From assembly GCA_030390025.1 (NCBI GenBank), contig CM059449.1, positions 15,500,001 through 15,564,000 on the forward strand: a stretch of 64,000 bases of DNA, given 5' to 3'. The notes below the pieces were generated by a model. That model had not been told where the DNA came from. It did not search any database and saw only the letters and a program-made list of their open reading frames with translations. The DNA comes from Squalus acanthias (lineage: Eukaryota). Position numbers and translations under genes: made by a program. Shown here piece by piece: positions 1,846-58,700 of the stretch (the stretch's first letter is position 1; every line of letters begins with the position of its first letter).

Positions 1846-2184
1846 ACAGTGGGTTGACGAGTGGAATCAGAGTTTTCCAGTCCCCAGATGCCATCAATGT
1901 AACAGAAGGAGGATCGGTGCAGCTGAACTGCACTTTTGAAGCGATTGGTTCTGTTGGACATGTTGTTTGGAGGCGGGCCACAGAAAACATGGTAGTGTCG
2001 GTTCGGAATCCTTTCTATCAGAGCCGGATAACGAAGTCAGGGCCGAAATTATTTACCGAAAGAATGGCTTTCCTTGAAATCATCAATTTACTGACAATGG
2101 ACTCAGATTTTTACTACTGCGAGGTGGAATTTGCGGCGGTTGGGAAAGCAAGCGGGACAGGAACACAACTTATAATAACTGACA
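1846..2184 (+). CDS. NCR3: V exon of activating-type NKp30/NCR3-like receptor (copy A1), single-exon VJ-type IgV domain
   Basis: Acceptor tatactctag|AC and donor GACA|gtgagt give 339 nt, phase 1-1, no stops. Encodes IRVFQSP..SVQLNCTF..VGHVVWRR..DSDFYYCEVEFAAVGKASGTGTQLII, with B-strand Cys, C-strand Trp, DxxxYYC and a J-like GxGT. This pattern recalls human NKp30 (YVCRVEVLGLGVGTGNGTRLVV). The symbol denotes family resemblance, not proven orthology. Confidence 0.85.
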
Positions 2185-3524
2185 GTGAGTAGAAAAGATC
2201 AGAGTTCGTTTTAAGAATTTACCAATATTTTGACATTGGTATGGCTGTACCTGTGCTATGATATGAGATTTCAGTTCGGTTTTGTGAATTGTGTCTGTGT
2301 GTCAATATCACTTTCAAAGTACATCGGGCACAATTGGTCGACAATTAATATCCTGAAAGTGCCATATATCTGACTTGAATCTGACTATTCAAGGCGCGGT
2401 GCTTTAGGAATAGGAATACAGGAGCTTCAGGCTACTTCCCCACCCACCACCCCACCATCTTAAAGGGAGGGTTATCTCAAAATAGTACTTCGCATTATCA
2501 CTTCATTTTCTTGCTTGGCACCTAACATGTCGCTGTTAAGGCAACTATGTTCGTCCCTTTTTACAAAGCTAATGAGTCCGAGCTTTTCTAGACTTTTGTT
2601 TCTCACATAACCTAGCACTAGAACACGAGGGAACAGGCTAGCGTTCACTCCACCTCCGGGACTTGCATGTCTCCCTTGAGCTGAGTGACCAGAAACATAA
2701 TACTCAAGATGCCATCTGACTAGAGCACCGTATGATTGGATCCCCACACATTTAAAAGGAAACATGCCTTCTATATTTTTGATTCGTCTTGGGATGTGGG
2801 CGTCGCTGGCAAGGCCAGCATTTATTGTCCATCCCTATCTGCCCTTGAGATGGTGGTGGTGAGCCACCTTCTTGAACCGCTGCAGTCCGTGTGGTGAAGG
2901 CACTCCCACAGTGCTGTTAGGGAGGGAGTTCTAGGATTTTGACTCAGCGACGATGAAGGATCAGCGATATACTTCTAAGTCAGGATGGTGTGTGACTTGG
3001 AAGGGAACTTGGAGGTGGTGGTGTTCCCATGCGCCTGCTGCCCTTGTCCTTCTAGGTGGTAGAGGTCGCGCGTTTGGAAGCTGCTGCTGACGAAGCCTTG
3101 GCGTGTTTAATGAAAAAGGCTTCAGGTAGAATTTACTGTTTTCGATATAAGCCTTTACTTTCTACATGTTAGCGTCTTGGTTAAAATGAAGGGTATGTGG
3201 AACGCTAGTATTTCAACAAATAATTATAGTTTTTTTCAGTTTCCACGGGGATGCAGTACCTTAGATTACATATAAAAATAGGGAACGGCCTTTCTTTAAA
3301 GTATAGAACGCCACTGGAATGTTATTTCAGTTTTCATATCCTATAACTGATCAACCAAAATTTAATTATTAAATTGCGAACTAGAGGTCTTCGTTATGTA
3401 GATTTCTGAATCACATCGATTGGGGGGCGGGGGTTGGTGGGGCGGCGGGGTGATCGCCTGTTATACACTCTGCCCAGTCTTGCGTCCAATTGCCTGAAAA
3501 TTAAATTGAATATTGGGCGCACCA

Positions 3525-4140: not shown

Positions 4141-4239
4141 CTGACTGAATGATCGATCACTCCACCATTTTCTTACATTATCTTTCCCTTTAACCAAGCG
4201 CCACCATACTGACTATATTATTGTTTCTGTTTCTAACAG

Positions 4240-4361
4240 GAGCTGGAGTCGAGCCTATCTGCCATTTCCCCACACTTAGCGCTGGATTACAAGTTACAAA
4301 AACGGTGCTGCTGATCATTCTCATAATCACAGGCCTGACGACGTACCTCTGTCCCACGTAG
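4240..4361 (+). CDS. NCR3: Stalk/TM/stop exon of activating-type receptor A1: RAGVEPICHFPTLSAGLQVTKTVLLIILIITGLTTYLCPT*
   Basis: Strong acceptor ttgtttctgtttctaacag|GA, phase 1 matching the V exon. It has a stalk Cys, a Lys at the start of the hydrophobic segment, essentially no cytoplasmic tail and TAG at 4359-4361. The exon is conserved at 43800-43921. The leader is expected about 0.9 kb left of the window by homology with 38646-38709. Confidence 0.8.
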
Positions 4362-8630: not shown

Positions 8631-11600
8631 TTACTTCACCGAAGCGTACAGCACCGCTGCTCGCTTCACAGGGCACTCAGTTTGATTGCTGTCCTGTAGA
8701 TTCAGCGTGGCGTATTGCAACTTGCCATCTCCTTCTCTCTATTGAGATGAAAGGATTTCAGTGTTGAATAAAATATTGCAAACTGATTATAGCGTCGGGC
8801 CTCAAACCCAGCGCACCAGATGTTGTGCAGTTTCAATGGAATATAATTCAACCCAGTAAACATTCTACATATAATTAGAATATGACTCCACCTATCAAAT
8901 ATTGTTTCCTTAAATAGGATATATGGCGCCGTCCTAAATATTCCTGTCCTTTTAAATATATTTCAGCGAGTCAACGATTGCACGATTTAAGTAACAAGCA
9001 AGGGAAACAGTCAATCTAATTAACACATCATTCTAATGTTAAAATCCATGCATTTAGAACAATTCACACTTAATGAATTCAGGAGCGGTGGGTCAGTCAG
9101 CCTATGGGAAAGATAGATTAACATTTGAGAATAACTGTTCAGGAGCACTTTCCGTTGAAGGCAAAGTGCCAGCGGATTACCCTGTGTTGTTTCTTCCAGG
9201 TTCTGACTGACCTACTTTGCATATCCAGCATTTTCTTTTACGGCTTCAGATTTCCAGTTTTCCTCCTTATCTCGACTTGTCAAAGTAGGTGTATTTTTGC
9301 CTGTGTGCGTGTATATGCCTGGGTGCCCCTATTTTGGGGTCTATTTTAATGTTCCTGTGTGTATCTGGTGCTTTGTTTGAACGTTAGTGGGATGTGGGCG
9401 TCGCTGGCAAGGCCAGCATTTATTGCCCATCCCTAGTTGCCCTTGAGAAGGTGATGGTGAGCCGCCTTCTTGAACCGCTGCAATCAACGTACTCCCACAT
9501 TGTTTTTCATAGCGGCTTTTTACAACTGAGTGGCCATTTTAGAGGACAGTTGAGAGTCAACCACATTGCTATCGGTCTGGAGTCACATATAGGACAGACC
9601 AGGTAAGGACGGCAGATTTCCTTCCCTGAGGGGCATTAGTGAACAAGATAGGCTTTTACAACAATCCCATTGCTTCATGTCACCATTACTGATACTAGCG
9701 TTTTATTCCAGATTTATTTAATTACATTTATATTCTCCAGTTGCTGTGGTGGGGCTTGAACTCAGGTCGCACAGATCATTAGTCCAGGTCTAGATGGATT
9801 ACTAGTCCAGTAACATAAGCACTATGCTACTGTTCCCTATATAGGCTTGGACATGCACTTGCGTATTTGTGTGTGGCTATATGTATTTGCGAGTGTCTTT
9901 GAGAGTGTGTCTTTCTGAGTGTGCAGGTGTTTGAATCCTGGGACTGTAAGATTTCATTTCATGTTTTCCTGGTTGGCTTTCTGTTGAATTATAACTAATA
10001 TTCTAGTCCCGGCTATATAGAATTTCGATTTTCAACTTGCCGCGCCTGTGCATAAAATTGGCGTTTGAGATGGGCCGCACCTGTGCTTCACGCTTTTGTG
10101 GGAAGTTGAGAATCTACCCCACATCTTCAAGAAGAAAAGTTGAGGCCGTCCAACCTCGTTCCGTCTTTAGATTTTTACATCCAACTGAGAGAACTTTTTA
10201 CATGATAATCAACCTGGAAAAGTAAGCAGTAGGTTTAAAAATAACAAAAATAGCCCAAGTCATTGTGCTACATACCCGATTTGTTCTTCGTCACTCAGAG
10301 CTGTCATAATTCCTCTCTATAAAGCATAGAAAAAAGAAAAAAGAAAGACTTGCATTCATTAGCGACTTTCACCACCTCAGGATGTCCCAAAGCGCATCAC
10401 AGCAAATGAAGTACTTTTTAAATTGTAGTCGCTGTTGTAATGTAGGAAACGCGGCAGCCAAGTTACGCACAGCAAGCTCCCACAAACGGCAATCTGACAA
10501 TAGCCAGATAATCTGTTTCAGTGATGTTAATTGAAGAATAAACATTGGCCGGGACACCGGGGAGAACTCCCCTGCTCTTCTTCAAAATAGTACCAAGTGA
10601 TCTTTTACATCCAGCTGAGAGAGCAGACTGGGCCTCGGTCTACTGTCTCATCCAAATGACGGCACCTCCGACAGTGCAACGCTCCCTCAGCACTGCACTG
10701 GGAGTGTCAGATTAGATTTTTTTGTGCTCAAGTCTCTGGAGCGGGATTTGAAACCCACAACCTTCAATGTTTCAGAGGCGAGGGTGCTACCAACTGAGCC
10801 GCAGGAAATGACCCTGAATAATTTAATTTACTTGAACAGTGTATATAATACAATACAACATATTGTGCCATAGATATAGCGCTCTAATGCACTGTGGTAT
10901 AATGCTATACGATACAATATAACATGGTAGAAAACAGGAGAACGCAATAAAATAAAATATACAGTAGGATGTACCGTATTGCACAACAATAAAACGATAC
11001 AATTCGTATGGTCCAACATATAATACACTACGGTGCAATATAAAACATCCTAAGGTTTTTCTGTACGATATAAACGGTATTCATACCAGATTCCTAGGCC
11101 CACTATTTTAACTGTTTACTTTAAACTAATGCAAAAAACAATTTGATATGAGCGCGCCAAGCACTCGTTCGAGAATAGGGTGATATCCAGGCGAATCTAC
11201 TATAATATATGATATATAATACATCATAACATTGAAACGTACTTTTAAATATCATGTAATAATTCATCACAAAAAAATCAGGGTGTGGTAAGAAAATATT
11301 TTAAAATATTATATTATCCATAAACCTTAACACTTTCAGTTGACTTTGTGGCCAAGACGTCTAACATGTGTCACTCAATAGCGGTTCTGGAAGCAAGAGC
11401 AATTGAATCATAGAGTCATACAGCACAGAAGGAGGTCATTCGGCCCAACCTGCCTGTGCCGGCTCTCTGAAAGAGCAATAATTAGTCCCACTCCCCCCTG
11501 CTCTTTCCCCATAGCCCGGAAACATTTCCCGTTTTAAGTATTTATCCAATTCCCTTTTGAAAGATATTATTGAATCTGCTTCCACCGCCCTTTCAGGCAG

Positions 11601-11994
11601 TGTATTTCAGATCACAACAACAGGCTGCGGAAAAAAAAATTCTCCTCATCGCCCCTCGGTTTTTTTTGCCAGTATCTTAAATCTGTGTCCTCTGGTTACC
11701 CACATAATAATCAGACAGAACAAGACTGAACTCCTGGTCAACGGATTATACCTTATAGACAAGAAAATTAACCAGATTATCAATTAAAATCAAATTAAAT
11801 CGAAGGAGTAAGCGGTCGGAGTTTATTAAAAGTGACAGGTTGTTCACGTTTCTTTCTGTCACCCACCTGTTTCATGGATCACTGAGTAGAGCGGATCTGG
11901 ACTGAAGCAAAAGAGGACATCAGAAAATTTAGGCATCCAAAAATAAGAAAGTGGCTTTCTTTATATGAAAATAAATCTATGTAAAGTTACCTGG
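8631..11994 (-). pseudogene. Orphan 3' remnant of inhibitory gene (copy I1): exons 11901-11867, 10316-10276 (in-frame TGA), 8738-8631
   Basis: Homology breaks inside the 22-nt micro-exon at about 11994, and no TM, V or leader follows. The ITIM exon is still intact (LQYATL, VLYASV). Confidence 0.78.
10345..10805 (-). mobile_element. tRNA-derived SINE with L2-like tail (DeuSINE/SacSINE-like); copies at about 22793-23250, 36075-36510, 53318-53766
   Basis: Minus-strand head ggctcagttggtagcac..gggtttcaaatccc and tail ..tgtgggagcttgctgtgcg..cctacattacaacag. The family name is tentative. Confidence 0.7.
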
Positions 11995-12507: not shown

Positions 12508-12555
<48 letters not shown>

Positions 12556-17075: not shown

Positions 17076-17134
17076 GAGCTGGAGTCGAGCCTATCTGCCA
17101 TTTCCCCACACTCAGCGTTGGATTACAAGTATAA
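17076..17134 (+). pseudogene. Truncated orphan copy (A2) of the activating stalk/TM exon: RAGVEPICHFPTLSVGLQV*
   Basis: The acceptor is intact. An approximately 375-bp deletion relative to 4295-4670 removes the TM and creates TAA at 17132-17134. There is no V exon between 12 and 17 kb. Confidence 0.72.
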
Positions 17135-21082: not shown

Positions 21083-21190
21083 TTACTTCACCGAAGCGTA
21101 CAGCACCCCTTCTCGCTTTACACGGCGCTCAGTTTGATTGCTGTCCTGAATATTCAGCGTGGCGTATTGCAACTTGTCATCCCCCTCTCT
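21083..21190 (-). CDS. I2 exon 8: terminal exon REGDDKLQYATLNIQDSNQTERRVKREGVLYASVK* with two ITIMs
   Basis: Acceptor tttcatctcaatag|, phase 0. LQYATL and VLYASV both match (I/V/L/S)xYxx(L/V), with the tyrosines 22 aa apart. TAA at 21085-21083. Both motifs are kept in the copies at 8631-8738 and 48322-48429. Confidence 0.85.
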   Translation of the reverse strand, partial: REGDDKLQYATLNIQDSNQTERRVKREGVLYASVK

Positions 21191-34200: not shown

Positions 34201-35389
34201 CTCTGTGTGGGATACGTGGCTTTGTCAATATGGGCATTGAATACAAAAACAAGGAAGTCAAGCTAAGCCTATTCTAAGCACTGGTTAGGAGTCAGCTGGT
34301 GTATTGTGTACAATTCTGGGCACCACTCTTTAGGATGGATGTCAAGGCCCTGGAGAGGCGGCAGAGAATATTTGGGGCGAATGACCTGTTTCTGTGCTGT
34401 AAATTACATGCCATTCTCTGCCCAAACATCGCACCATTAGTCTGCTCGCCTTGTACTAACAATCTATAACAGTTGCCAGATAATAATTTGCCGTTCGTAC
34501 CATTAGCTCTCATTATCCTATCTGTGCTACATCATTGTCCTCATCATTGGTGTCAAGACTGCACATCTGATGGACAAATCTAGGCCCACAGGGCGAGGAG
34601 CTCCTAGAATCAATATACCGTTGATGAGATTGTTAGAGACTCGGAAAATAAGACTTTGTAGGAATGCTGTCTTTAAACGTACGTCTCCTTGAGCCTGTTG
34701 GCAAAGAGAGCATATATGTGTTTATAGTACCGAGACACCTTGGTGAAGGACCAAGTCTCATCGTGGAGAGGATCCGCCAAGGCTCAAAGCAATCGGATGG
34801 GAATATTATGGCCTGCAATACCTATGATTTCTAAGGGGTCTGGCTAAATTCATGGGAAGGAAGGTTTTAAAGGCACGGGGCGGGATGGTCAGGAGAATAG
34901 GGTAACAGTAGCTAGCTCCTGTGCAAGAGCTATAGTGGGTGCATGCGCGATGGGGCGAATAAACTCCTAAGCTACAATTTCTATGATTCAGAGTCCAAAC
35001 AGACCGTCCACATCCCATGAACAAATCAAAAAAATCAACCAATCTCTAACATGTGCAGAGGTTGCTTGTTGCTCGGCAGAACCCAGCTCTACAGCAGCAG
35101 CAGAACTCGGCTTTCCCAATTTCTCACCGTTCCACAAAGGAATGAGTCTGAAACAAGGTCGTGTGAGAGCTTTTAATGATGAAACTATAGTTAGCCAAAA
35201 GAAGCTCGGCAGAGTAAACATTGCGAGAGCGAAGGTCAGACTCCGGCAAAGGGACAAAGTTATCAATTATGCTTCCGAAAATGAAATCAATCAACTCAAT
35301 AATTCTCCATCGTTCAGCCAGATTAGTCAAACTTTGAATCGGCGATCAATGAAATATTCCCCAAGAAGTAAATCAGTCTTCGGTCTATC

Positions 35390-41600: not shown

Positions 41601-43921
41601 CCGAAAGAATGGCTTTCCTTGAAATCATCAATTTAATGACAATGGACTCAGATTTTTAGTACTGCGAGGTGGAAATTGCGGCGGTTGGGAAAGCAAGCGG
41701 GACAGGAACACAACTTATAATAACTGACAGTGAGCAGAAAAGATCAGAGTTCGTTTTAAGAATTTATCAATATTTTGACATTGGTATGGCTGTACATGTG
41801 CTATGCAAAGAGATTTCAGTTCGGTGTGCTGAATTGTGTCCGTGTGTCAGTATCACTTTCAAAGTACATCGAGCACATTTGGTCGACAATTAATATCCTG
41901 AAAGTGCCATATATCTGACTTGAATCTGGCTATTCAAGGCGCGGTGCTTTAGGAATAGGAATACACGAGCTTCAGGCTACTTCCCCACCCCCACCACCCC
42001 ACCACCTGAAGGGGAGGGTTATCTCAAAATAGAACTTCGCATTATCCCTTGAGTTTCTTGCTTGGCACCTTACATATCTCTGTTAAGGCAGCTATGTTCG
42101 TCCCTTTTTACAAAGCTAACGAGTCCGAACTCTTCTAGTCTTTTCTCTCTCTCATAACCTCGCACTGGAACTCGAGGGAACAGGCTAGCGTTCACTCCAC
42201 CTCCGGGACTTGCATGTCTCCCTTGAGCCTGAGTGACCAGAAATAAGCACAATACTCAAGATGCTATATGACCAGAGCACTGTACGGTTGGATCCCGCAC
42301 CATATAAAAGGAAACATGCCTTCTATATTTTTTATTCGTTCATGGGATGTGGAATTCGCTGGCAAGGCCAGCATTTATTGCCCATCCCTAATTGCACTTG
42401 AGAAGGTGGTGGTGAGCCACCTTCTTGAACCGCTGCAGTCCGTGTGGTGAAGGCACTCCCACAGTGCTGTTAGGGCGGGAGTTCCAAGATTTTGACCCAG
42501 CGACGATGAAGGATCGGCGATATACTTCTAAATCAAGATGGTGTGTGACTTGGAGGGGAACTTGGAGGTGATGGTGTTCCCATGCGCCTGCTGCCCTTGC
42601 CCTTCCAGGCGGTAGAGGTCGCGAGTTTGGGAGCTGCTGCTGGAGAAGCCTTGGCGAGTTTAATGAAATAGGCTTCAGGTAGAATTTACTGTTTTCGATA
42701 TAAGCCTTTATTTTAAACAGGTTAGCGTCTTGGTTAAAATGAAGGGTATGTGGAACGACAGTATTGCAAAAAATAATTATAGTTTTTTTCAGTTTCCACG
42801 GGGATGCATTACCTTAGATTACATATAAAAATAGGAAACGGCCTTTCTGTAAGGTATAGAACGCCGCTGGAATGTTATTTCAGTTTTCATGTCCTATAAC
42901 TGAGCAATCCAAATTAAATTATTAAATTGCGAACTAGTGGTCTTCGTTATGTGGATTTCTGATTTCAATTGATGGGCGGTGGTGGGGGGCGTGGGGGGTG
43001 GGCGGGGTGATCGCCTGTTATGCACTCCGCCCAGTAATGCGTCCAATTGCCTTAAAATAAAACTGAATATTGGGCGCACCAAAGCCAAATGCTGCGGATG
43101 CTGGAAATCTGAAATAAGAAAGAGAAAATGCTGGAAAATACTCAGCAGTTCAGGCAGCATCAGTGGTGAGTGAGAAACAGAGATAACTTTTCAGGTTTCG
43201 GAAAGAAGGGCAACGACCCGAAACTTAAACTCTGTTTCTCTATCTCTGCCTGCAGATGCTGCCTGACCTGCTGAGTGTTTCCAGCATTTTCTGCTTTTTA
43301 TATTGAATATTGGGCGTGTTGTACAGCGGTCGGCCAATATGATTCTGTCTGCCTTGCGAGCCTGTCCATGTCCAATTTCACCCCTATAACAACACAAAAA
43401 CAGAAAATGCTGGAAATACTCAGCAGGTCAGGCAGCATCCGTGGAGAGAGAAACAGATTTAACGTTTCAGGTCGATGACCCTTCGTCAGAACTGGAAAAA
43501 GTTGGAGATGGAACAGGTTTTTAAGCAAGTGTAGGGCCAGGGAAAGCGGGGAGGGGAGGAAAGAACAAAAGGGAAGGTCTGTGATAGGATGGAAGGCAGG
43601 AGAGATTAAGAGACACAAGGGATGATGGTGCAAGGCAAAAGGAGATTTTAATGGGACAAGTTAAGAAACAAAGATGACTCTAGATGAAGTGTAAATGGCA
43701 ATGGCTGAATGATCGACCACCCCACCATTTTTTTGCATTATCTTTCACTTCAACCAAGCGCCACCATACTGACTATATTATTGTTTCTGTTTCTAACAGG
43801 AGCTAGAGTCGAGCCTATCTGCCATTTCCCCACACTCAGCGCTGGATTACAAGTTACAAAAACGGAGCTGCTGATCATTCTCATAATCACAGGCCTGACG
43901 ACGTACCTCTGTCCCACGTAG
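38646..43921 (+). pseudogene. Activating-type NCR3-like pseudogene (copy A3): leader 38646-38709, V 41391-41729, TM 43800-43921
   Basis: The V exon is near-identical to 1846-2184 but has TAG at 41657-41659 in the FYYC motif. The candidate leader MKMQTIHMWMFLN*RTILLHV|gtgagc has TGA at 38685-38687. The TM has V>E (KTELL). The leader assignment is the least certain part. Confidence 0.8.
38765..39280 (-). mobile_element. 3' fragment of a second CR1/L2-clade LINE family (others at about 2785-3105, 9388-9835, 21828-22272, 26805-27088, 42343-42660, 49062-49421, 56605-56890)
   Basis: Shared motif gtcgctggcaaggccagcatttattgcccatcc and ORF GSKSWNSLPNSTVG..LQRFKKAAHHHLLKG. Confidence 0.8.
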
Positions 43922-47300: not shown

Positions 47301-49421
47301 CAAGTTTGCGGCTCAAGGCCCACTCCAGGAGTTGAGCACATAAAGTAGGCGAATCTCCATTGCAACACTAAGGGAGTCTGGGAGTTAAGCCTGGGAGGAG
47401 CAAAAGGGAACGTTTGGTTGGGAACTTGGCACCGCAATAACGCTGGATTCTTCTTTTATCAAAATCATTGGAAGGAAATTCCAGCGTTGGAACCTTCCCA
47501 TGTGATTTTCCTTCATGATGTGCCCCGGCGATGCTGAACGCCTAGACAGTGAAGACAAAAATTCTACCCGCATCTTTCAGGAAGTAGTTAGGTGTGCCGA
47601 TCTATGAAACGTCCTGCCAAGTAATAATTTCTCGGGGAGGTGCTTCTGCCGATCTCCTGCCGTGACTTCTCTGGAAGTTAGGTAAACCCCGCTTTAGCTA
47701 TTACACGCTTCTCTGAGTTCCGCCGATGTTCCGCCGACGTTACCGCAGGAGAGTGGGAGAACCCAGCAGAAGATATTTCCCCCCCTTGAGTTTAACATGG
47801 AACATTCATTTTAATAAAAGATACAACAGAAAATCAACAGAACAACCTGACATGGGTCAACTGAGAAGAACTTTTATTGTGAAAATGTCAAATGCTTTAC
47901 AGGATTATGATGAAATGTAAGGAGTTATGTGATGAAACTAGGCCGTGTGAACAATAACGAGTACGAACGCTCAACATGTTGGTTTTCATTTTAACAATGG
48001 CATGAACCAATTTATTTTCTAGGATAGCCCGCCCCTTAATATAGGGGACTAATACATTTCATACAAATGTGATAAATGTTCACAACTAACACTAAAGAGT
48101 CTGTTGTTAAAGCTCACTAACTAAGTTAGAGGATAAAATATTCGCCTGGAAATTCCCATGGAGGGTTCTCCGATCATCCGCCGTTGAAGATGCCACAGAA
48201 CCCCCGAGCAACCGCCCAAGTTACTGCGGGAGATCGGGACAACTCTGCGGAAATTCCACCATTGTCCATCGCGGGTGGGGGCAGGTGCGTCTCAGCTTTG
48301 GGGTGAAATTTGTCGGCTCTCTTACTTCACCAAAGCGTACAGCACCGCTTCTCGCTTCACACGGCGCTCAGTTTGATCGCTGTCCTGAACATTCAGCGTG
48401 ACGTATTGCAACTTGTCATCTCCCTCTTTCTAGTGAGATGAAAGTTTTTCAGTGTTGAATCAAATATTGTAAACTGAATAGAGCATAGGGCCTCAAACCC
48501 AGCGCACCAGATGTTGTGCAGTTTCAATGGAATATAATTCAACCCAGTAAACATTCTACTTAAAGTTAAAATATGACTCCACCTATCAAATATTGTTTCG
48601 TTAAATAGGATAGATCGCGCCGTCTTAAATATTCCTGTCTTTTTGAATATAATTCAGCGAGTCAACGATTGCACGAGTAACAAGCAAGGGAAACAATTGA
48701 CGTAATTAACACATCAGTATAATGTTAAAATTCATGCCTTTAGAACAATTCACACTAAATGAATTCAGGAGCAGTGGGTCAGTCAGCATCTGGGCAAGGC
48801 AGATTAACATTTGGGAATAACTGTTCAGGAGCACTTTCCATTGAAGGCAAAGAACCAGCCCACCGGTTACCCTGTGTTTTCTCATCCAGGTGCTGACTGA
48901 TCTACTTTGCATATCCAGCATTTTCTGTTGCGGCTTCAGATTTCCTCCTTATCTCGACTTGTCAAAGTAGGTGTATTTTTGCGTGTGTATGCCTGGGTGA
49001 CCCAATTTTGGGGTCTATTTTAATGTACCTAGGTGTATCTAGTGCTTTTTTTATTCATTCATGGGATGTGGGCGTCGCTGGCAAGACCAGCATGTATTGC
49101 CCATCGCTAGTTGCCCTTGAGAAGGTGGTGGTGAGTCGCGTTCTTGAACCGCTGCAGTCAAGGTACTCCCACATTGTTTTTCTTAGCGGTTTTTTACAAC
49201 TGAGTGGCCATTTTAGAGAACAGTTGAGAGTCAACCACATTGCTGTGGGTCTGGAGTCACATTTAGGACAGACCAGGTAAGGACGGCAGATTTCCTTCCC
49301 TAAGGGGCATTAGTGAACAAGATGGGTTTTTACGACAATCCGATAGTTTCATGTCACCATTACTGATACAAGCTTTTTAGTGCAGATTTTTTCATTAAAT
49401 TTAAATTCCCCAGTTGCTGTG

Positions 49422-52400
49422 TCATAGTCATAGTGTCATAGAGTTATACAGCACAGAAAGAGTCCCTTCGGCCCATCATGTCCGCGCCGGCCATCAAGCC
49501 CTATCTATTCTAATCCCATTTTCCAGCACATGAACCGTTGCCTTGTATGCTATGGCGTTTCAAGTGCTCATCTAAATGCTTCTTGTTTGTTGTGAGGATT
49601 CCTGCCTCTACCACCCTTTCAGGCAGTGAGTTCCAGATTCCAACCACCCTCTGGGTGAAAAACTTTTTCCTAAAATCCCCTCTGAACCTCCTGCCCCTTA
49701 CCCTGAAACTATGCCCCCTGGTTATTGACCCCTCTACTCAGGGGAAAAGTTCCTTTCCATCTACCATATCCATGCCCCTCATAATTTTGTACACCTCAAT
49801 TAGATCCCCCCCTCAGCATTCTCTGCTCTAAGGAAAATAACCCCAGCCTGTCCAGTCTCTCTTCACAGCTGAAGCGCTCCAGCCCAGGTAACATCCTGGT
49901 GAATCTCCTCTGCACCCTCTGCAATACAATAACATCCTTCCTGTTGTGTGGCGACCAGAATTGCACACAGAATTCCAGCTGAGACCTAACTACTGCTTTG
50001 TACAGCTCCATCATAACCTCCCTGCTCTTATATTCTATGCCTCGGCTAATGAAGGCAAGTATCCCATATGCCTTTTTAACCACCTTATCTACCTGTCCTG
50101 CTGCCTTCAGGGATCTATGTACATGCACATCAAGTTCCCTCTGATCCTCTGTCCTTCCTCGTGTCCTACCATTCATTGCGTATTCCCTTGCCTTGTTAGT
50201 CCTCCCAAAATGCATCACCTCACACTTTTCAGGGTTAAATTCCATTTGCCACAGTGCTGCCCATCTAACCAACCCGTCTATATCCTCCTGTAGCCTGAGG
50301 ATTCCCTCCTCGCTATTTACCACTCCACCAATTTACGTGTCATCAGCGAATTTACTGATCACACCTCTTACATTCATTTCTAAATTATTAATATACACTA
50401 CAAACAGCAAAGGACCCAGCACCGGGCTCTTACCTTCTTGACCAGTCTCCCATGTGGGACTTTGTCAAAAGCCTTACTGATGTCCATGTAGACCATATCA
50501 ACTGCACTACCCTCATCCACAAACCTAGTCACCCTCTCGAAAAATTCAATCAAATTGTTTAAACATGATCTCCCCCTGACAAAGCCATGCTGACTATCCT
50601 TGATTAATCCTTGCCTCTCCAAGTGGAGACTAATTCTGTCCTTCAGAATTTTTTCCAATAATTTCCCTGCCACTGATGTTAGGCTCACTGGCCTGTAATA
50701 CCCTGGATGAACCCTACTAAGCTTCTTGAATAATGGTACTACGTTAGGTGTTCTCCAGTCCTCTGGCACATCTCTTGTGGCCAGAGAGGTTCTGAAAATT
50801 TGTGTCAGAGCCCCTGCAATCTCCTCCCTTACCTCACACAGCAGCCTGGGATACATATCGTCTGGACCTGGGGATTTATCCACTTTTAAGCCCGCTAAAA
50901 CCGCTAGTACCTCCTCTTTCTCAATACTAATTTGTTCAAGTATATCACAATCCCCCTGCCTGATTTCTATGCCTACATCGGCCTTCTCCAGAGTGAACCC
51001 AGGTGCAATATATTCATTTCAAACCTCACTTACATCTTCCAGCTCTACACACAGATTGCCACTTTGGTCCCTAATGGGCCCTACACTTTCCCTGGTTATC
51101 CTCTTGCGCTTAATATACTTATGAAGCACCTTGGGATTTTCCTTTATTTTGCCCACTAGTGTTTTTTCATGCCCCCTCTTCGCTCCCCTAATTTCTTTTT
51201 TAAGTACCCCCCTGCACTTTCTGTACTCCACTAGGGCTTCCACTGTTTTTAGTCCATTGTATCTGCCAAAAGCCTCCCTTTTTTTCCTAATAAATTCCTG
51301 TATATCCCTTGACATCCAGGGTTCCCTAGGCTTGTTGGTCCCACCCTTGACCTTTATGGGAACATGTTGACGTTGTACTCTCTCTATTTCCTTTCTGAAA
51401 TACTCCCATTGCTCGGATGTGGATTTTCCTACAAGTAGCTGATCCCAGTCTACTTTGGCCAGATCCTGCCTTATATTAAAATCGGCCTTCCCCCAATTTA
51501 GAACCTTTATTTCCGTTCAATCTTTGTCCTTTTCCATGACTACCTTAAATCTCACCGAATTATTGGTCACCGTCACCAAAATGCTCTCCTACTGACACTT
51601 CTACCACTTGCCCGGCTACATTCCCTAGAATTAGGTCCAGCACCGCCCCCTCTCTTGTAGAGCTTTCTACATCCTGGCTCAAAAATCTCTCCTGGATGCA
51701 CTTTAAGAATTCGGCACCCTCTAAGCCTTTCACACTCTGACTATCCCAGTTAAAATTGGGGAAGTTGAAATCCCCCCCTATTATTTCTATACTTCTCAGG
51801 GATTTGCCTACATATCTGTTGCTCTATCTCCCCCTGACTGTTTGGGGGCGTTTAGTACACTCCCAGCAAAGTGCTTGCCCCCTTTTTGCTTTTCAGTTCT
51901 GCCCAGATGGCCTCATTAGAGGAACCTGCTAAGATATCATCCCTCCTTACAGCAGTAATTGACTCCATGATTAATATTGAGACACCCGCTCCACTTTTAC
52001 ACTTCCCTCTGCCTCGCCTGAAGATTCTATACCACGGAATATTGAGCTGCCAGTCCTACCAGGGCGACACGGTGGCATAGTGGTTAGCACTGATGCCTCA
52101 CAGCACCAAGGACCCGAGTTCGAATCTGACCTCGGGTGACTGTCTGTGTGGAGTTTGCACATTCTCCCCGTGTCTGCGTGGGTTTGCTCTGGTTTCCTCC
52201 CACAGTCCAAAAATGTGCGGGTTAGGTTGATTTGGCTATGATAAATTAACCCTTAGTGTTAGGGGGGGGGGTTAAATATGTGGGGTTGTGGGGATAGGAT
52301 GGGATATGTTAGGGGAAATTAAATACGTGGGGTTACAGGGGTAGGGTGGGATATGTGTACTGTGGGGATTAAAGCAGGGACGGGGTACTGGATTTAGATG

Positions 52401-52705
52401 ATCAGCCATGATCGTATTGAATGGTGGAGCAGGTCGACTGGCCGACTCCTGCTCCGAGATTCTATGTTTACCCCTCCCTCAACCATGTCTCTGTGATAGC
52501 AACAATATCATACTCCCATGTGTTCATCAACAACTTCAATTCATCTGCCTTACTCGCAAGACTCCTTGTATTAAAATAAATGCCATCCAACCTTGCCATA
52601 CTCCCTTGTGCCGTTACATATGTGCTCTGCCTTTCAGGCTGACTTGTTTTTTCCTCTATATTTGGCTCTGCATCACCCCCTACTATAGCTCCACTCCGTA
52701 TCCCG
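49422..52705 (-). mobile_element. About 3.3-kb CR1-type LINE inserted in the last intron of I3, same subfamily as 32297-34200, with a nested SINE
   Basis: RT motifs KAFDKVPH and QHGFVRGRSC, with frameshifts. It splits an older repeat that is contiguous near 22185 and 9745. Confidence 0.9.
52061..52466 (+). mobile_element. HE1/V-SINE-type tRNA-derived SINE nested in the CR1
   Basis: tRNA-like head (ggtggcatagtggttagc..gagttcgaatc), V-domain tgtgtggagtttgcacattctccccgtgtctgcgtgggtt and a LINE-derived tail. Confidence 0.85.
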
Positions 52706-55700
52706 TATGTGGTCGGGTTTGAATTACACGTCGCCCGGATCCTGCGTCCAGGTCTCTGGATTACTGGTCCAGTAACATAACCACTATGCTGCCGTTCCCT
52801 GTATATGCTTGCGCATGCACCTGCTTATTTGTGTGTGGCTATATGTATTTGCGAGAGTTTGTGCGAGTGTGTCTTTCTGTGTGTGCAGGTGTTTGAATTC
52901 TGGGACTGTTATATTTCATTTCATGCCTTTCTTGATTGTCTTTCTCTTGAATTATAACTAATATTTTAGTCCCCGTCTCTATTCAATTTCGATTTCCAAC
53001 TTGCTGCGCCTGTGCGTAAAACTGGCGTTTGGTTGGGCCGCACCTGTGCTTTACACCTGTGTGGCAAGTTGAGAATCTACCCCACATCTTCAAGAAGAAA
53101 AGTTGAGGCCGTCCAACCTCGTTTCATCTTCAGATTTTTACATCCAACTGAGAGAACGTTTTACATGATAATCTACCTGGAAAAGTAAACCAGAGGTCAG
53201 TAGGTTTAAAAATAATATAATTAGCCCAAGTCATTGTGCTACATACCCGATTTGTTCGTCTGCACTCAGAGCTGTCATAATTCCTCTCTATAAAGCATAG
53301 AAAAAGGAAAAAAAGAAAGACTTGCATTTATATAGCGCCTTTGACCACCTCAGGACGTCCCAAAGCGCTTCACAGCCAATCAAGTACTTTTTGAATTGTA
53401 ATCGCTGTTTTAATGTAGGAAACGCGGCAGCCAAATTGCGCATAGCAAGCTCCCACAAACAGTAATCTGACAATGGCCAGAAAATCTGTTTCAGTGATGT
53501 TAATTCAGGAATAAACATTGGCTGGGACACCGGGGAGAACACCCCTGCTGTTCTTCAAAATAGTACCACGGGATCTTTTACTTCCAGCTGAGAGGACAGA
53601 CGGGGCCTCGGTCTACTGTCTCATCCAAAAGACGGCACCTCCGACAATGCAACGCTCCCTCAGCACTGCACTGGGAGTGTCAGCCTAGATTTTTGTGCTC
53701 AAGTCTCTGGATTGCGACTCGAAGGCCACAACCTTCAATGTTTCAGAGGCTAACAACTGAGCCACTGGAAATGACATTGCACAATTTAATTTACTTGAAC
53801 AGTGTATACAATACAATACAACATATTGTGCCGTATATATAGCGCTATAATGCACTGTGGTCTGATGCAAAAGGATACAACATAACATGGAAGAAAAGGA
53901 GAACGCAATAAAATAAAATATACAGTAGGATGTACCGTATTGCACAACAATAAAACGATACAATTCGTATGGACCAACATATAATACGCTACCACGCAAT
54001 ATAAAACAGCATAAGGCTTTTCTGTGCGATATAAACGGTGTTCATATCAGATTCCGAGGCCCACTATTTTAACTGTTTACTTTAAACTAATGGGAAAAGC
54101 AATTTAACATGAGCGCGCCTAGCACTCGTACGATAATAGGGTGATGTCCAGGCTAATCTATTATAATAGATGATATATAATACAGCATAACATTGAAACG
54201 TACTTTTCAATATCATGTAATAATACATCACACAAAAAAATCAGCGTGTGGTAAGAAAATATCATAAAATATTATATTAGCCACGAACCTCAAAACTTCA
54301 AATTGACATTGTGACCAAGACGTCTAAAAAGTGTCACACAATAGCCGTTTTGGAAGCAAAAGTTATTGAATGATAGAGTCATACAGCACAGAATGAGGCC
54401 ATTCGGCCCAATATGCCTGTGCCGGCTCTCTGCAAGAGCTATTAATTAGTCCCAATCCCCCCTGCTCTTTCCCCATATCCTGGAAACATTTCCCTTTTTA
54501 ACTATTTATCCAAATCCCTTTTGAAAGTTAATGTTGAATCTGCTTCCACCGCGCTTTCAGGCAACGCATTCCAGATCACAACAACTCACTGAGTAAATAA
54601 AACATCTCCTCATCTCCCCTTGGCTTTTTTTTTGCCAATACCTTAAATCTATGTCCTCTGGTTACCCACAGAATAATCAGACAGATCAATACTGAACTCT
54701 TGGTCAACGGATTATACCTGATAGATAAGAAAATTAACCATATTATCAATTAAAATCGAATTAAATCGAAGGAGTAAGCGTTCGGAGTTTATTAAAAGTG
54801 GCAGGTTGTGCACATTTCTTTCTGACTTCCACCTGCTTCATCGATCACTGTGTAGAGCGGATCTGGACTGAAGCAAAAGAGGACATCAGAAAATTTAGAT
54901 ATCCAAAACAATAAAATACATTAAAGAAAAAGTAAGTGGCTTTCTTTAAATAAAAGTAGATCTATGTAAACAGTTACCTGGTGGGTTGCTGAAGAGCGAC
55001 TATGAGGAGAGAAAGACAAATACAGAAAAATTAAAGAGCTGAAGTTATTGATGATATCTGCAAGAAGCAACTGAAAAAAATTGGTATCGAATGAAGCGAA
55101 TCACATTTTGGGGGCAATTTTAACCAAACCCGCGGAGAAACGGACGGGATCGGGTGCAACGTTTCGAAGTCAAATGAGAGCAATATTGGGCGGGTCTCAT
55201 GCCGGCGTTCCACCCGATCCCGTGCGTTTCCCGCCCGGTGAGTTCGGATAAAATTACCAGAGAATTTGCGAACCACATGGAATTCAGTAGAGGTACAATT
55301 AGTGCTGTTACCTCTCTTACGACGCCGGCTGATAACAACTATGATTATGATGATGATGATGATCAGGAGAGGCACCCCTACCGCTTCATAGACGAGTGGT
55401 GGGATCATTGGTGCGGACTCGCCGTGGCTGCTCTCTCCACCACCTGTGTGTAAATGTAAAGTTTATTTTGTGAAACAGAGCAGTCAAGAGCAGGGCAATG
55501 GTCACATTGAGATTGAGGATCAGCAAATGTGAGACAGATTCCCAATCCTCTTTGACATGCGGGGCTATTTCACACTGGCATACATGAAACTAGGCCACCG
55601 ATCAAAACGCAAAATGTCACCAGTGGGCAGCTGGAGATATTCCCACCCGGGAAGTAAGACTGGGAGAAATTTAATGTAGGGACGTTTAATGGGTTGGTGA

Positions 55701-58700
55701 CAGTTTCCTTTCTTTTAAATGCCGGGGGGTAGGGGTGGGGTCGTGTGAGTTCTGTTAACATTGGACCTTAGAAACAGGAGGAGTCCATTCAGTCCCTCCA
55801 GCCTGTTCCAACATTCAACGAGATCATGGCTGATCTGCGACCTAACTCCATATAACCGCCTTTGGCCCATATTCCTTAATACGTTTGGTTAACAAAAATC
55901 TATCAATCTCCGATTTAGAATTAACAATTGATCTAGCATCAGTTGTCGTTTGAGGAAGAAAGTTCCAAACTTCTATCAGACTTTATGTGTGTAGAAGTGT
56001 TTCCTAATTTCACTCCTGAAAGCTCTGCTATAATTTCTACACCATAGCCCCTAGTCCTAAACTCCCCAACAAGCCGAAATAATTTCTCTCTATCTACCAT
56101 CTCTGTTCTCCTTAATATCACGAGAGTGTCGCTCCTCCCGCTCAGTTTTTTTGAATTCAGTAGCCCCTGGAGATCCCATCGATCCTGAGCACGAACCAGA
56201 AAATCTTCCCCTCCTATTTACGGGATGCTTAAGACAAAAGGAACATCTGGAAATTATAAGTGCCGAGACTGGGTGGTCAACGTGGTTCTTCCGCGGACCC
56301 ATCTTTGCATTTTGTTGGCGAACAATGTTGTAATTTCTATTTGCACACACAACTATATCCGCCACTACCACCATTTACAGGATGGCAGTGAAATCTAACT
56401 AATCATATACGCGTTGACCGGTTTATTCCTAATATTGGCACGCGGTGATTTCAAGGCTCACGTGTTGCTCTAATTACGGGGCTCCAGTCTTCGCCTCGCA
56501 CACTGTAACTGGGTTGACTACTTATCTATAGCCCTATCTAAAATTGTATACAGCAACTGAATGTAATTATTATCCCCACTATTTATTTATTTTAAAAGGT
56601 AATTCTCGGGATACGGGCGACGCTGGCGAGGCGGGCATGTTATTGTCCATCTCTGGTTGACCCCTTGCGAAGGTGGTGGTGGGCCGCCTTCTTCTTGAAC
56701 TGCTGAATTCAGTGTGGTGAAGGTTCTCCCGCAGTGCTGTTAGGGAGGCAGTTCTAGGATTTTGGAAGGAACAGCGATACAAGTCCAAGTCAGGCTGGTG
56801 TGTGACTTGGAGGGGGACTTGGAGGTGGTGGTGTTCCCATGCGCCTGCTGCCCTTGAACTTCTAGGTGGTGGAGGTCGCGTTTTGGGAGTTCCAATTGAT
56901 GTAATGGAGAATTTTTCTCTACGGCCGATATTACCCCTAGTAAAATCCCATATGATTGCGTGCAATTTCATTTGTAAGGACATCTCCACCAATCCAAACT
57001 TACTGTATTGACGCAGTTCCACGGTCACTGTTGTCCCGGTTCGTGAGCTGCAGCGATTCCCACGAGGTGCACTTTGCAGGAATAGAACCCGGTATCTTCC
57101 GGTTTCAGCTGGATTATTCTAATGGTCGCGTCTCTCCTCTGTCTGAAATCCTCTTTACTTGCCCCGAACACCCTGCCTCTGTATTCCGCTGTATTGTTGG
57201 AAACTTCATTTCCCTGTTTGGTGCCTCGGTGCCACGTGTAGCTGCCGATTCCTGTGGGACCCTCATATCTACAGAGCAGGTCCGCTGTCTGTCCCGCGGT
57301 TTTGGTGAGAGATTGCGGTCTCTGAATTACGGTAATATTTCCAACAGTAACTGCTGAATCTGGGTAAAACAGACCATTTATAAATATACAGGGCACTTCT
57401 TTGCTTTAAAGCAGGCCGTGGAAGGGCTGGTTTGAAGCAAATATTTGTTCGGAGGATTTTTGATAAGGTATTCATGATCTTTAACTTGAGGGAATAAAAA
57501 CTGAAAACACTGGATACACTCAGCACGTCAGGCAGCATCTGTGGAGAGAGAAACAGTGTTAACGTTTCAGCTCCATGACATTTCGTCAGAACTGGAAAGG
57601 TTGGAGATGTACCAGGTTTTAAGCAATTGCAGAGGCAGGGAAAAGGAGGAAGGGGAGGAAAGAAGAAAAGGGAGGTTCTGTGATAGAGTGGAAGGCAGGA
57701 GAGATTCAATGACAAAAGGGATGATGGTGCAAGACAAAAAGAGATGGTAATAGGACAAGTAAAGGAACAAAAGATGGGTGCAGGAGGGGTGTAAATGGTT
57801 AAATTGAGGGATATTGGTGCTGGAGCTGGAGCGCCTTTGGTTTTTGGGATCACTCCATGTCAAGTATAGAATGGATCTGGTACAAAGTACCTCTGTCCCG
57901 TTCCAAATAATCAGCTTTAACTTTAATTTCAGTTCTCCCGATATGTTTTCTGTGTTGCCCGCTGGTCTCATTAACACTTTGAGCGAGGGTGTGAAATGGG
58001 CAATCTCGAAATTAAACGCCTTGCCCGATGTTCTCTTCCATTTGGGTGCCATTTTAACTCTGGGTGCTAAATGGGCGAGGTCGGATCGGCTGCCTGAAAT
58101 CAAAATCGGGGCAGGTGTACAACTGCGGCTGATCCGACGTCGCCATAGCTCTCCATATATCTTTCTACTTCTTTTCTTGATCTGTCTTTGCATTTCTCAC
58201 TGTCTGCTTTCTGGTTCTCAGTTTCTCTCACTGGTTCTCTGTGAATTTGGGAGTGATGAAACAGGAGAATGAAAGATGTTTTATTTAAATTTGGAGAGAC
58301 AGGCGTTGAGGGTCCCTGGGTTACATTCTGGGACCAGTGGGGGACACACGCAGGCTGTGCAAAGACTGGTGTCCTGTATCTCTAATTCTTTTCATTATAT
58401 CTCTGTATCTCTACAGTTTTCTTTATATCTCTATTCCTCTCTCTCTATGTGCCTATCTGTATGTCGATCTCGCTTTATATTTCTGTATCTCTCTGTACCT
58501 TTCCTTTATAACTTTATAATTTTGTATTCCTTGAAATCTCCACATCTCTCTCTTTGAAACTCTCAGAATGTCTGTTCTCTTTTTCTCTCAGGATCCCTCT
58601 CAGGCCTATTATTTGAGAGAGACATTTTAAACTTAAACAGAACCTGCTCCAAAGACACAAGAGATGCGGAACTAGAATGTGTGCCAACACCTTCTGCCTC

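What the first reader, a model, noticed from the sequence alone, without database searches (positions are those of the whole stretch)
1846..57353. Paired activating/inhibitory NKp30-like receptor cassette, duplicated as a unit
Seen in sequence: two divergent NKp30-type V domains are attached to opposite signalling modules. The plus-strand gene ends in a Lys-containing TM with no tail. The minus-strand gene has an uncharged TM and two ITIMs. They lie tail-to-tail within each unit and head-to-head between units (leaders at 31748 and about 38646), and the pair was copied three times. Established: a TM basic residue with a short tail marks adaptor-coupled (FcR-gamma/CD3-zeta/DAP12) activating receptors, and tandem ITIMs recruit SHP-1/2. 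Mammalian NCR3 is a single activating-type gene, and multigene NCR3 families are known in sharks and frogs. Inference: this is a KIR/Ly49/NITR-style paired-receptor system built on the NKp30 fold in a cartilaginous fish. I cannot confirm from here whether this linked paired arrangement has already been described.
Basis: partly seen in the sequence, partly recalled or inferred. Interest (0 to 1): 0.9.

Follow-up and report, generated by a model that had tools for sequence, protein, structure and literature searches.

The report
Shark NKp30-like receptor cluster, mostly decayed copies
This stretch of a shark chromosome holds one intact inhibitory NKp30-like immune receptor gene, one probably intact tail-less partner of a different V lineage, and broken copies of both; it is an ordinary piece of a known, fast-evolving gene family rather than a new kind of paired-receptor system.

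Summary
The sequence features are real, but the reading is overstated.

**What holds.** Both V exons are V-set domains whose best solved relative is human NKp30/NCR3. The plus-strand V exon (1846-2184) is followed by an exon (4240-4361) coding a Cys stalk, a Lys, a hydrophobic stretch and a stop. The minus-strand gene (31724 down to 21083) has two tandem V exons, an uncharged TM, micro-exons of 22, 35 and 41 nt, and a last exon with two ITIMs. It matches a Heterodontus RefSeq protein exon by exon.

**What does not.**
- The three units are partial copies.
- Unit 1 keeps the tail-less gene but only a relic of the ITIM gene.
- Unit 2 is the reverse.
- Both genes of unit 3 carry stops or a frameshift.
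- The two V types are about 31% identical and belong to separate old lineages. They are not a KIR-style pair with matched ectodomains.
- No transcript joining V-A to its TM exon was seen, and that exon also fits a GPI signal.

Heterodontus RefSeq proteins of this family already include Lys-TM and ITIM forms. This scan noted similar genes in other windows of the same genome. Verdict: new member of a known kind.

The parts
1846..2184 (+). V-A exon of the intact tail-less gene (unit 1). It is a VJ-type V-set domain, phase 1 at both ends; the leader lies before the window start.
   Evidence: Splice sites read. Pfam V-set 1.2e-06, above the cut-off. PDB top hit NCR3 2e-07. A 340-nt contig of run X1 lies exactly on 1846-2184.
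4240..4361 (+). TM-A exon: Cys stalk, Lys, about 17 hydrophobic or neutral residues, then CPT and a stop. Either an adaptor-type TM or a GPI signal.
   Evidence: Strong pyrimidine tract plus CAG acceptor, and phase 1 fits the V-A donor. 119/122 identical to the unit 3 copy, against 91.6% background. No contig of X1 lay on it at 88% or more.
8631..11901 (-). Unit 1 relic of the ITIM gene. The 35-nt exon (11901-11867) is open. The 41-nt exon (10316-10276) has TGC>TGA. The ITIM exon (8738-8631) is open. There is no TM, V or leader.
17076..17130 (+). Unit 2 relic of the tail-less gene: the first half of the TM-A exon, cut by a deletion. No V-A exon.
21083..21190 (-). Last exon of the intact inhibitory gene. 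It holds LQYATL and VLYASV (two canonical ITIMs) and the stop codon.
   Evidence: 56% identity to the Heterodontus P0002 C-terminus, E 3.4e-07.
22723..22763 (-). 41-nt cytoplasmic micro-exon (enters in phase 1, leaves in phase 0).
   Evidence: Of 9 open AG..GT/GC candidates it has the best pyrimidine tract (0.85), with a GTATGT donor. Its peptide resembles P0002 'TNNSSERRGTN'.
25054..25088 (-). 35-nt micro-exon coding PDPLYAVIHET, a third tyrosine that is not a canonical ITIM.
   Evidence: It resembles P0002 'PDPINAEI' and nurse-shark P0001 'NPLYADM'.
25201..25222 (-). 22-nt micro-exon (enters in phase 1, leaves in phase 2).
   Evidence: the only 22-nt candidate in that interval. Pyrimidine tract 0.9, GTAACT donor. 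Its peptide resembles P0002 'TRQQPA'.
25534..25665 (-). Stalk plus uncharged TM exon of the inhibitory gene, ending in basic stop-transfer residues.
27204..27554 (-). V-I(b) exon, 351 nt, phase 1 at both ends.
   Evidence: Pfam V-set 7.2e-13. PDB NCR3 8.6e-14.
27770..28120 (-). V-I(a) exon, a tandem duplicate of V-I(b) 566 bp away. 20 of 348 nt differ; dN/dS 0.36.
31682..31748 (-). Leader exon of the inhibitory gene. ATG at 31724, in-frame ATG at 31748, phase-1 donor after 31682.
34451..34513 (-). Possible upstream first exon, similar to the N-terminus of Heterodontus P0002.
   Evidence: tblastn: 62% over 21 aa, E 0.012. Weak.
38646..38706 (+). Leader of the unit 3 V-A copy, with an in-frame TGA at codon 14.
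41391..41729 (+). Unit 3 V-A exon, disabled by TAC>TAG at the first Tyr of the YYC motif (41657-41659).
   Evidence: dN/dS against unit 1 is 0.77.
43800..43921 (+). Unit 3 TM-A exon copy, with Val>Glu just after the Lys.
48322..57353 (-). Unit 3 copy of the inhibitory gene, disabled. The V exon (57353-57004) has a 1-bp deletion. The TM exon (55443-55312) has Ala>Glu. The micro-exons and the ITIM exon (48429-48322) are open. A retroelement sits at 49426-52708. No leader was found.

Best explanation
The window is a piece of a large shark NCR3 (NKp30)-like multigene cluster that evolves by gene birth and death.

**History (inferred).** An ancestral two-gene unit had a V-A gene on the plus strand and a V-I gene on the minus strand, tail to tail. 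It was duplicated to three copies, which then decayed.

**What is left (shown).**
1. One intact inhibitory-type gene (about 31.7 kb down to 21.1 kb). It has a leader, two tandem V exons, an uncharged TM, 22-, 35- and 41-nt micro-exons, and a last exon with two ITIMs.
2. One apparently intact tail-less gene: the V-A exon at 1846-2184 plus the Lys-bearing hydrophobic exon at 4240-4361. Its leader lies outside the window.
3. Relics and pseudogenes of both.

**Mechanism (inferred from established ITIM and adaptor biology, not shown).**
- The V-I receptor binds a ligand, its ITIM tyrosines are phosphorylated, and it recruits SHP-type phosphatases to damp lymphocyte activation.
- The V-A receptor most likely sits in the membrane. 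It would pair its Lys with the acidic TM residue of an ITAM adaptor (FcR-gamma, CD3-zeta or DAP12 type).
- The two V domains are only about 31% identical. They probably see different ligands, so they are neighbours of opposite sign rather than a matched pair.
For: - **Architecture:** self-BLAST blocks and tblastn copy counts.
- **NCR3 affinity:** human NCR3 fills the top 4 rows of each PDB search. Single sequences: V-A 2e-07 against 1.1e-05 for the next hit, V-I 8.6e-14 against 3e-10. Lineage profiles: 3.4e-14 against SIRP-alpha 6.8e-09, and 1.1e-17 against SIRP-beta 2.4e-11.
- **Names:** 16 of the 30 homologues I chose to look up carry an NCR3 or NCR3-like name.
- **I-gene model:** every exon has AG/GT sites, and the phases chain 1-1-1-1-2-1-0. 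The tail follows Heterodontus P0002 (268 aa, two ITIMs) exon by exon.
- **Both V-I exons are open**, with dN/dS 0.36.
- **A-gene model:** phase-compatible strong acceptor, and an open frame ending in a stop.
- **RNA-like evidence:** a contig of run X1 ends exactly at both V-A exon borders. Its depth is 56 against 2-3 in the intron, which is what splicing at those borders would give.
- **Family habit:** short-tailed NCR3-like proteins with a basic TM residue exist in other species, for example Hemitrygon P0145, Xenopus P0095, Pleurodeles P0149 and Polypterus P0049.
- **Decay:** lesions read.
Against: - No transcript joins V-A to the TM-A exon. In run X1 nothing lay on 4240-4361 at 88% likeness or more.
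- X1 comes from a relative or a paralogue (39 of 339 letters differ), so this neither confirms nor refutes the join.
- V-A orthologues in Heterodontus, Stegostoma and one unnamed protein (P0101) carry a different, conserved TM plus a long tyrosine tail. Nothing like it is in the window. The Lys exon is therefore lineage-specific or unused.
- The A leader is off the window, so I could not show the gene is intact.
- Deletions and single-base lesions could be assembly errors. No reads of the source individual were available: the best DNA holder held 0.25 of the words.
- MHC linkage, ligand and signalling are untested.
Confidence: 0.72

Rival explanations
1. This is a functional KIR/Ly49/NITR-style paired activating/inhibitory system on the NKp30 fold, kept as three working cassettes whose partners sense the same or related ligands.
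For: - Opposite 3' modules sit tail to tail in every unit.
- Leaders lie head to head at 31724/31748 and 38646.
- Both V types are NCR3-like.
Against: - V-A and V-I share about 31% identity and sit in separate starred clades with orthologues across elasmobranch orders.
- Unit 3 has a leader TGA, a V-A TAG, a V-I frameshift and acidic TM substitutions.
- Unit 1 lacks V-I and TM-I, and unit 2 lacks V-A.
Confidence: 0.08
2. The tail-less gene is GPI-anchored (or shed as a decoy), not adaptor-coupled. Exon 4240-4361 would then be a GPI-attachment signal. It has small residues (S-A-G) as the attachment site, a six-residue polar spacer that holds the Lys, and a hydrophobic stretch running to the C-terminus with no basic stop-transfer residues.
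For: - Read directly from the exon translation. The order of small triplet, short spacer and terminal hydrophobic run is the textbook layout of such signals. That layout is recalled knowledge; no predictor was available.
- There are no cytoplasmic basic residues after the hydrophobic run, unlike TM-I, which ends in SRHRKR.
Against: Other NCR3-like proteins have a basic residue a few positions into a terminal TM and tails of only 3-7 residues. Examples are Polypterus P0049, Xenopus P0095 and Pleurodeles P0149. The same shape is therefore the family's usual adaptor-type anchor.
Confidence: 0.2
3. Exon 4240-4361 is not used. V-A is then an orphan exon or pseudogene. Alternatively it splices to a TM or tail exon outside the window, or to one too diverged to detect, such as the conserved 'DCPP' TM and tyrosine tail of its orthologues.
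For: - Orthologues P0004, P0005 and P0101 share a different TM and tail.
- The V-A-like transcript contig in X1 has no partner on the TM-A exon.
Against: - No trace of the orthologous TM or tail anywhere in the 64 kb (tblastn at E up to 5 and up to 1).
- The next gene downstream is on the other strand.
- The TM-A exon has a very good acceptor in the right phase and is kept better than its surroundings: 97.5% against 91.6%.
Confidence: 0.15

Closest known systems
Shark NCR3 (NKp30) multigene family. Sources: nurse-shark NCR3 entries MT914154-914161 and Kinlein et al. 2021, Immunogenetics 73:333; RefSeq 'NCR3-like' models of Heterodontus francisci, Hemitrygon akajei and Pristis pectinata.
   Same: - VJ-type V-set domain in one exon.
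- 64-70% identity of V-I to nurse-shark P0001, Heterodontus P0002, Scyliorhinus P0009 and Chiloscyllium P0057.
- 49-65% identity of V-A to P0004, P0005, P0006, P0008 and P0101.
- ITIM tails built the same way.
- Lys-TM and ITIM members both occur on one 74.47-Mb Heterodontus record (contig lengths; TM and tail).
   Different: - Here the V-A lineage carries a Lys-bearing, tail-less exon instead of the TM plus tyrosine tail seen in its orthologues.
- The V-I gene has a tandem V-exon duplication.
- I could not read the 2021 paper (not held). I therefore cannot say whether this layout is described there.
Human NKp30 / NCR3
   Same: It is the best solved relative of both V domains. Recalled, not tested here: a single V domain, a basic residue near the outer end of the TM, and signalling through CD3-zeta or FcR-gamma.
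   Different: - Human NCR3 is a single gene with Arg and a 30-odd-residue tail varied by splicing (recalled).
- Here there are many genes, an ITIM-tailed form and a form predicted to carry two V domains.
Classical paired receptor families: KIR2DL/2DS, Ly49, SIRP-alpha/beta, PIR-A/B, teleost NITR
   Same: Linked genes of one Ig family with either ITIM tails or a basic TM residue and a short tail. They evolve by duplication, exon loss and pseudogenes.
   Different: In those families the activating and inhibitory partners have near-identical ectodomains (recalled). Here V-A and V-I share about 31% identity and are old, separate lineages.

Membership tests
NCR3 / NKp30 family | V-set Ig domain whose closest characterised relative is NKp30 | tested here: met
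   - Pfam V-set above the cut-off for all 3 intact V exons.
- Human NCR3 fills the top 4 PDB rows in 4 of 4 searches.
- No tree with outgroups was made.
NCR3 / NKp30 family | VJ-type domain: V and the J-like G strand (GxGTxL) coded in one non-rearranging exon | tested here: met
   GTGTQLIIT (V-A) and GPGTKVIV / GPGTTVTV (V-I) lie inside the single V exons. NCR3 is named as a single-exon VJ gene in PMC12227049 (passage).
NCR3 / NKp30 family | Linkage to the MHC (class III region) | not testable with these tools
NCR3 / NKp30 family | Binding of a B7H6-type ligand | not testable with these tools
   This needs binding experiments.
Paired activating/inhibitory receptors (KIR, Ly49, SIRP type) | Partners share highly similar ectodomains | tested here: not met
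   About 31% identity over 116 aa. The two fall in separate clades with 98/98 and 99/99 support.
Paired activating/inhibitory receptors (KIR, Ly49, SIRP type) | One partner has ITIMs; the other has a basic TM residue and a short tail | tested here: met
   By motif only: LQYATL and VLYASV, and Lys plus a hydrophobic run plus a stop. A GPI reading of the latter is not excluded.
Paired activating/inhibitory receptors (KIR, Ly49, SIRP type) | Close genomic linkage of intact partners | tested here: inconclusive
   The intact V-A gene (1846-4361) and the intact V-I gene (21083-31748) lie 17 kb apart with relics between them. The only complete tail-to-tail unit (unit 3) is disabled.
Paired activating/inhibitory receptors (KIR, Ly49, SIRP type) | The activating partner associates with an ITAM adaptor | not testable with these tools
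   This needs co-precipitation.
ITIM-bearing inhibitory receptors | One or more (S/I/V/L)xYxx(I/V/L) motifs in a cytoplasmic tail behind an uncharged TM | tested here: met
   Two motifs, with tyrosines 22 residues apart, sit in the last exon. The TM is uncharged. The tail is joined by phase-consistent micro-exons. Splicing is inferred from homology to P0002, not from RNA.
GPI-anchored proteins | C-terminal signal: small attachment-site residues, a short polar spacer, and a terminal hydrophobic run without a cytoplasmic tail | tested here: inconclusive
   The layout fits by eye. No GPI predictor was available.

The most novel reading that the evidence does not exclude
The V-A lineage is tyrosine-tailed in other sharks. 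Here it has acquired a different 3' exon that makes it a tail-less, Lys-anchored (activating or GPI) receptor. Beside it sits an inhibitory gene that has just doubled its V exon. That would be a caught-in-the-act example, in the oldest jawed vertebrates, of opposite-sign and multi-domain NKp30 receptors arising by exon swapping and exon duplication within a birth-and-death cluster.
Probability: 0.3. Interest if true: 0.5.

Novelty: new member of a known kind. Interest (0 to 1): 0.33.

Why it matters
NKp30 is one of the few NK-cell receptors traceable from sharks to humans. The window shows that a shark has NKp30-like genes of both signalling types side by side, with micro-exon-built ITIM tails and V-exon duplication. 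This illustrates how such families diversify. It adds an annotated example to a published family and does not open a new question. Its practical value is for annotation: the real genes are split into exons as small as 22 nt, which ORF-based calling misses, and two thirds of the apparent copies are relics.

Tried and rejected
- **Wrong first candidate for the Lys TM.** The hydrophobic ORF at 5425-5604, with copies at 17.9 kb and 45.2 kb, has no usable acceptor. I dropped it in favour of 4240-4361.
- **Length window of the word search.** The search for homologous proteins with the V-A exon alone found nothing (1 candidate). That reflects its length limits. The all-against-all search then gave 173 hits.
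- **Orthologue tails.** I looked in the window for the TM and tail shared by the V-A orthologues and found none.
- **Possible weak donor over the TM-A stop.** A GTAGGG overlaps the stop, and a neighbouring window's note prompted me to check it. blastn-short found copies of the 22-, 35- and 41-nt micro-exons only on the minus strand. I did not pursue a tailed isoform.
- **RNA.** No run on record as RNA holds the stretch. The one read-laying run used contigs of relatives.
- **Phylogeny.** The tree used 30 rows: 3 window V exons plus 27 domains from 22 proteins that I picked because they had names. It has no non-NCR3 outgroup. It shows two lineages, not NCR3 monophyly.
- **Literature.** Five searches found no open paper describing shark NKp30 signalling types.
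  - Kinlein et al. 2021: seen only in reference lists.
  - Flajnik et al. 2012 and Ohta & Flajnik 2015: seen only in reference lists.
  - PMC12227049 and PMC10751288: passages read.
  - PMC12272517, PMC10450919, PMC6514059 and PMC11302387: passages read, nothing relevant beyond citations.
  - I did not ask for supplements. They may list shark NCR3 genes.
- **Joined model.** The spliced proteins were never joined or searched as one sequence. Exons were searched apart.

Full report
**What is in the window.** The window has no N. Self-BLAST shows three partial repeat units at about 88-92% identity.
- Unit 1 (1-14283) matches unit 3 (39535-63720). Unit 3 carries an extra 49426-52708, with reverse-transcriptase ORFs (Pfam RVT_1). 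Unit 1 lacks the equivalent of 54908-61546.
- Unit 2 (16715-28642) matches 43456-57873.
- tblastn with the window's own exons finds:
  - the plus-strand V exon twice (1821-2189 and 41366-41734, 84.6% at protein level);
  - the minus-strand V exon three times (27.2 kb, 27.8 kb and 57.1 kb);
  - its TM exon twice (25.5 kb and 55.3 kb).

**The two V types are NKp30-like.**
- All three intact V exons pass Pfam's V-set cut-off.
- In PDB sequence searches the top four rows are human NCR3 each time:

| Query | NCR3 (best E) | Next best hit |
|---|---|---|
| V-A alone | 2e-07 | TCR alpha, 1.1e-05 |
| V-I alone | 8.6e-14 | a diabody, 3e-10 |
| V-A lineage profile (6 rows) | 3.4e-14 | SIRP-alpha, 6.8e-09 |
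| V-I lineage profile (6 rows) | 1.1e-17 | SIRP-beta-1, 2.4e-11 |

- The nearest proteins are elasmobranch.
  - For V-I: nurse-shark 'NCR3' P0001 (66%) and Heterodontus P0002 (68%), the only 2 hits among 38 candidates.
  - For V-A: 173 hits at E up to 0.001 in the representative library. The best single-domain hits are Heterodontus 'NCR3-like' P0004, Stegostoma P0005, Chiloscyllium P0006 and Pristis P0008.
- Of the 30 homologues I chose to look up, 16 carry an NCR3 or NCR3-like name.
- Both exons hold the J-like GxGTxL strand, so they are VJ-type single exons. A passage of PMC12227049 says the same of NCR3.

**The inhibitory gene (unit 2, minus strand).** All splice sites and phases were read, and enumerated.

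| Exon | Coordinates | Note |
|---|---|---|
| Leader | ATG 31724 (in-frame ATG 31748) to donor after 31682 | |
| V-I(a) | 28120-27770 | |
| V-I(b) | 27554-27204 | |
| Stalk plus uncharged TM | 25665-25534 | |
| Micro-exon, 22 nt | 25222-25201 | only candidate of that length |
| Micro-exon, 35 nt | 25088-25054 | |
| Micro-exon, 41 nt | 22763-22723 | best of 9 candidates |
| Last exon | 21190-21083 | LQYATL, VLYASV, stop |

- The phases chain without a break.
- The tail follows the Heterodontus RefSeq protein P0002 piece by piece: TRQQPA, PDPINAEI, TNNSSERRGTN, then the ITIM exon at 56% identity and E 3.4e-07.
- I found the 35-nt exon on my own.
- The two V exons are a 566-bp tandem duplication. 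Both are open with intact splice sites. They differ at 20 of 348 nt and 11 of 116 aa, with dN/dS 0.36.
- Both V exons can be included in frame, giving a two-V receptor, or either can be skipped. Which happens is not known.

**The tail-less gene (unit 1, plus strand).**
- V-A is 1846-2184.
- The next phase-compatible exon is 4240-4361, behind a long pyrimidine tract and a CAG.
- It codes a short stalk with one Cys, a Lys, about 17 hydrophobic or neutral residues, then CPT and a stop.
- By homology with unit 3, the leader should lie about 0.9 kb before the window.

**The state of the copies.**
- Unit 3, V-A copy:
  - a TGA at codon 14 of the leader;
  - TAC>TAG at the YYC motif and a GTGAGT>GTGAGC donor;
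  - Val>Glu in the TM.
- Unit 3, V-I copy:
  - a 1-bp deletion in the G strand;
  - Ala>Glu in the TM;
  - a retroelement in an intron;
  - no leader found in the window.
- Unit 1 keeps only the 3' part of a V-I gene: the 35-nt exon, a 41-nt exon with TGC>TGA, and an open ITIM exon.
- Unit 2 keeps only the first half of the TM-A exon.
- At face value the window holds one working gene of each kind, in different units, with relics between them. I could not check the lesions against reads of the source animal.

**Are they a pair?**
- The V-A and V-I domains share about 31% identity.
- In a 30-row tree, V-A groups (98/98) with Heterodontus, Pristis, Stegostoma and Chiloscyllium proteins.
- V-I groups (99/99) with Scyliorhinus, Heterodontus, Ginglymostoma and Chiloscyllium proteins.
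- The two lineages therefore predate much of the elasmobranch radiation. The V-A clade includes a batoid.
- The tree has no outgroup and only rows I selected.
- Classical paired receptors have near-identical ectodomains (recalled). That feature is not met here.
- The V-A orthologues P0004, P0005 and P0101 share a different TM and a long tail with tyrosine motifs (motifs). The Lys exon here is thus a departure from its own lineage.
- A true partner of V-A, if any, would be a V-A-like gene with such a tail elsewhere in the cluster.

**RNA evidence.**
- No run on record as RNA holds the stretch. The best DNA holder has 0.25 of the words, so the source individual's own reads do not appear to be among the runs served.
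- Laying contigs of four runs on 1750-4500 at 88% likeness gave one telling piece. In X1 (RNA by guess only), a 340-nt contig lies on exactly 1846-2184. It has 39 differences, and its depth is 56 against 2-3 in the intron behind it.
- A contig that stops at both exon borders is what splicing there would produce. It shows that a V-A-like exon is used in a relative or paralogue.
- Nothing lay on 4240-4361 in X1, X2 or X7.
- At 88.5% identity for the V exon, a 122-nt partner could fall under the threshold. It could also be that this transcript uses the orthologous TM and tail. The result is open.
- X18 (DNA of a relative, about 90-93% alike) covers the whole stretch at single-copy depth, including the TM-A exon.
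- The bins 2762-3129 and 3498-4141 are high-copy repeats.

**How it most likely works.**
- For the V-I gene, the inhibitory reading (ITIM phosphorylation, SHP recruitment) follows from two canonical motifs behind an uncharged TM, and from a tail conserved with other sharks. It is inferred, not shown.
- For the V-A gene, an adaptor-coupled anchor is the most likely reading. NCR3-like proteins of a ray, frog, salamander and bichir show the same basic residue with a tail of a few residues up to 15.
- A GPI signal fits the same exon, and non-use of the exon is not excluded.

**Comparison and novelty.**
- A shark NCR3 multigene family is published. I saw Kinlein et al. 2021 only in reference lists. 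Nurse-shark entries MT914154-914161 are cited in PMC12227049.
- Several NCR3-like proteins sit on one 74.47-Mb Heterodontus record:
  - ITIM forms P0002 and P0054;
  - the V-A orthologue P0004 (XP_067865593);
  - the Lys-TM form P0091 (XP_067865594), which has the next accession number.
  - Sources: names and contig lengths; TM and tail classes from my scan.
- This scan has also noted NKp30-like genes of both types in other windows of the same genome. They reach from about 1.9 Mb before this window to about 30 kb beyond it. Those notes are unchecked.
- I file this as a new member of a known kind.
- Two features are mildly new: the Lys exon on the V-A lineage, and the fresh V-exon duplication.

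Noticed in passing
window 2762-3129 and 3498-4141: High-copy interspersed repeats lie in the V-A intron. Summed contig depth reaches millions in a relative's DNA run and about 1e5 in RNA-sized runs of three other organisms. The repeats probably account for much of the 5-12% word shares of those runs; in X1 the V-A-exon contig also contributes.
   Followed up: partly
window 32380-34072 and 49796-51315 (minus strand): Reverse-transcriptase ORFs (Pfam RVT_1). One sits in the first intron of the intact inhibitory gene. The other is part of the 3.3-kb insertion in the unit 3 copy.
   Followed up: partly
window 11842-11926 versus 25029-25113: The 35-nt micro-exon with its flanks is 84/85 identical between unit 1 and unit 2. 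The surrounding block is 90.7% identical. This points to gene conversion or constraint on the splice signals.
   Followed up: no
window 12.3-13.3 kb and 61.8-62.7 kb: Long CT-rich simple-sequence blocks read as LSLSLS... ORFs of up to 304 aa on the minus strand. They are not genes. They mark the homologous ends of units 1 and 3.
   Followed up: no
window 34451-34513 (minus strand): A short open stretch resembles the N-terminal extension of Heterodontus P0002 (62% over 21 aa, E 0.012). It may be a conserved upstream exon of the inhibitory gene.
   Followed up: no
P0009 (Scyliorhinus canicula XP_038671257, 469 aa): This RefSeq model looks like two neighbouring genes fused. The first is an ITIM-tailed V-I-type receptor. 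The second is a V domain with an Arg-bearing TM and a short tail, whose stalk begins VEPI like the TM-A exon here.
   Followed up: no
window 5425-5604, 17554-18039, 45181-45360 (plus strand): A hydrophobic Lys-containing ORF segment recurs in all three units but has no splice acceptor. I take it for chance within duplicated intergenic DNA.
   Followed up: yes
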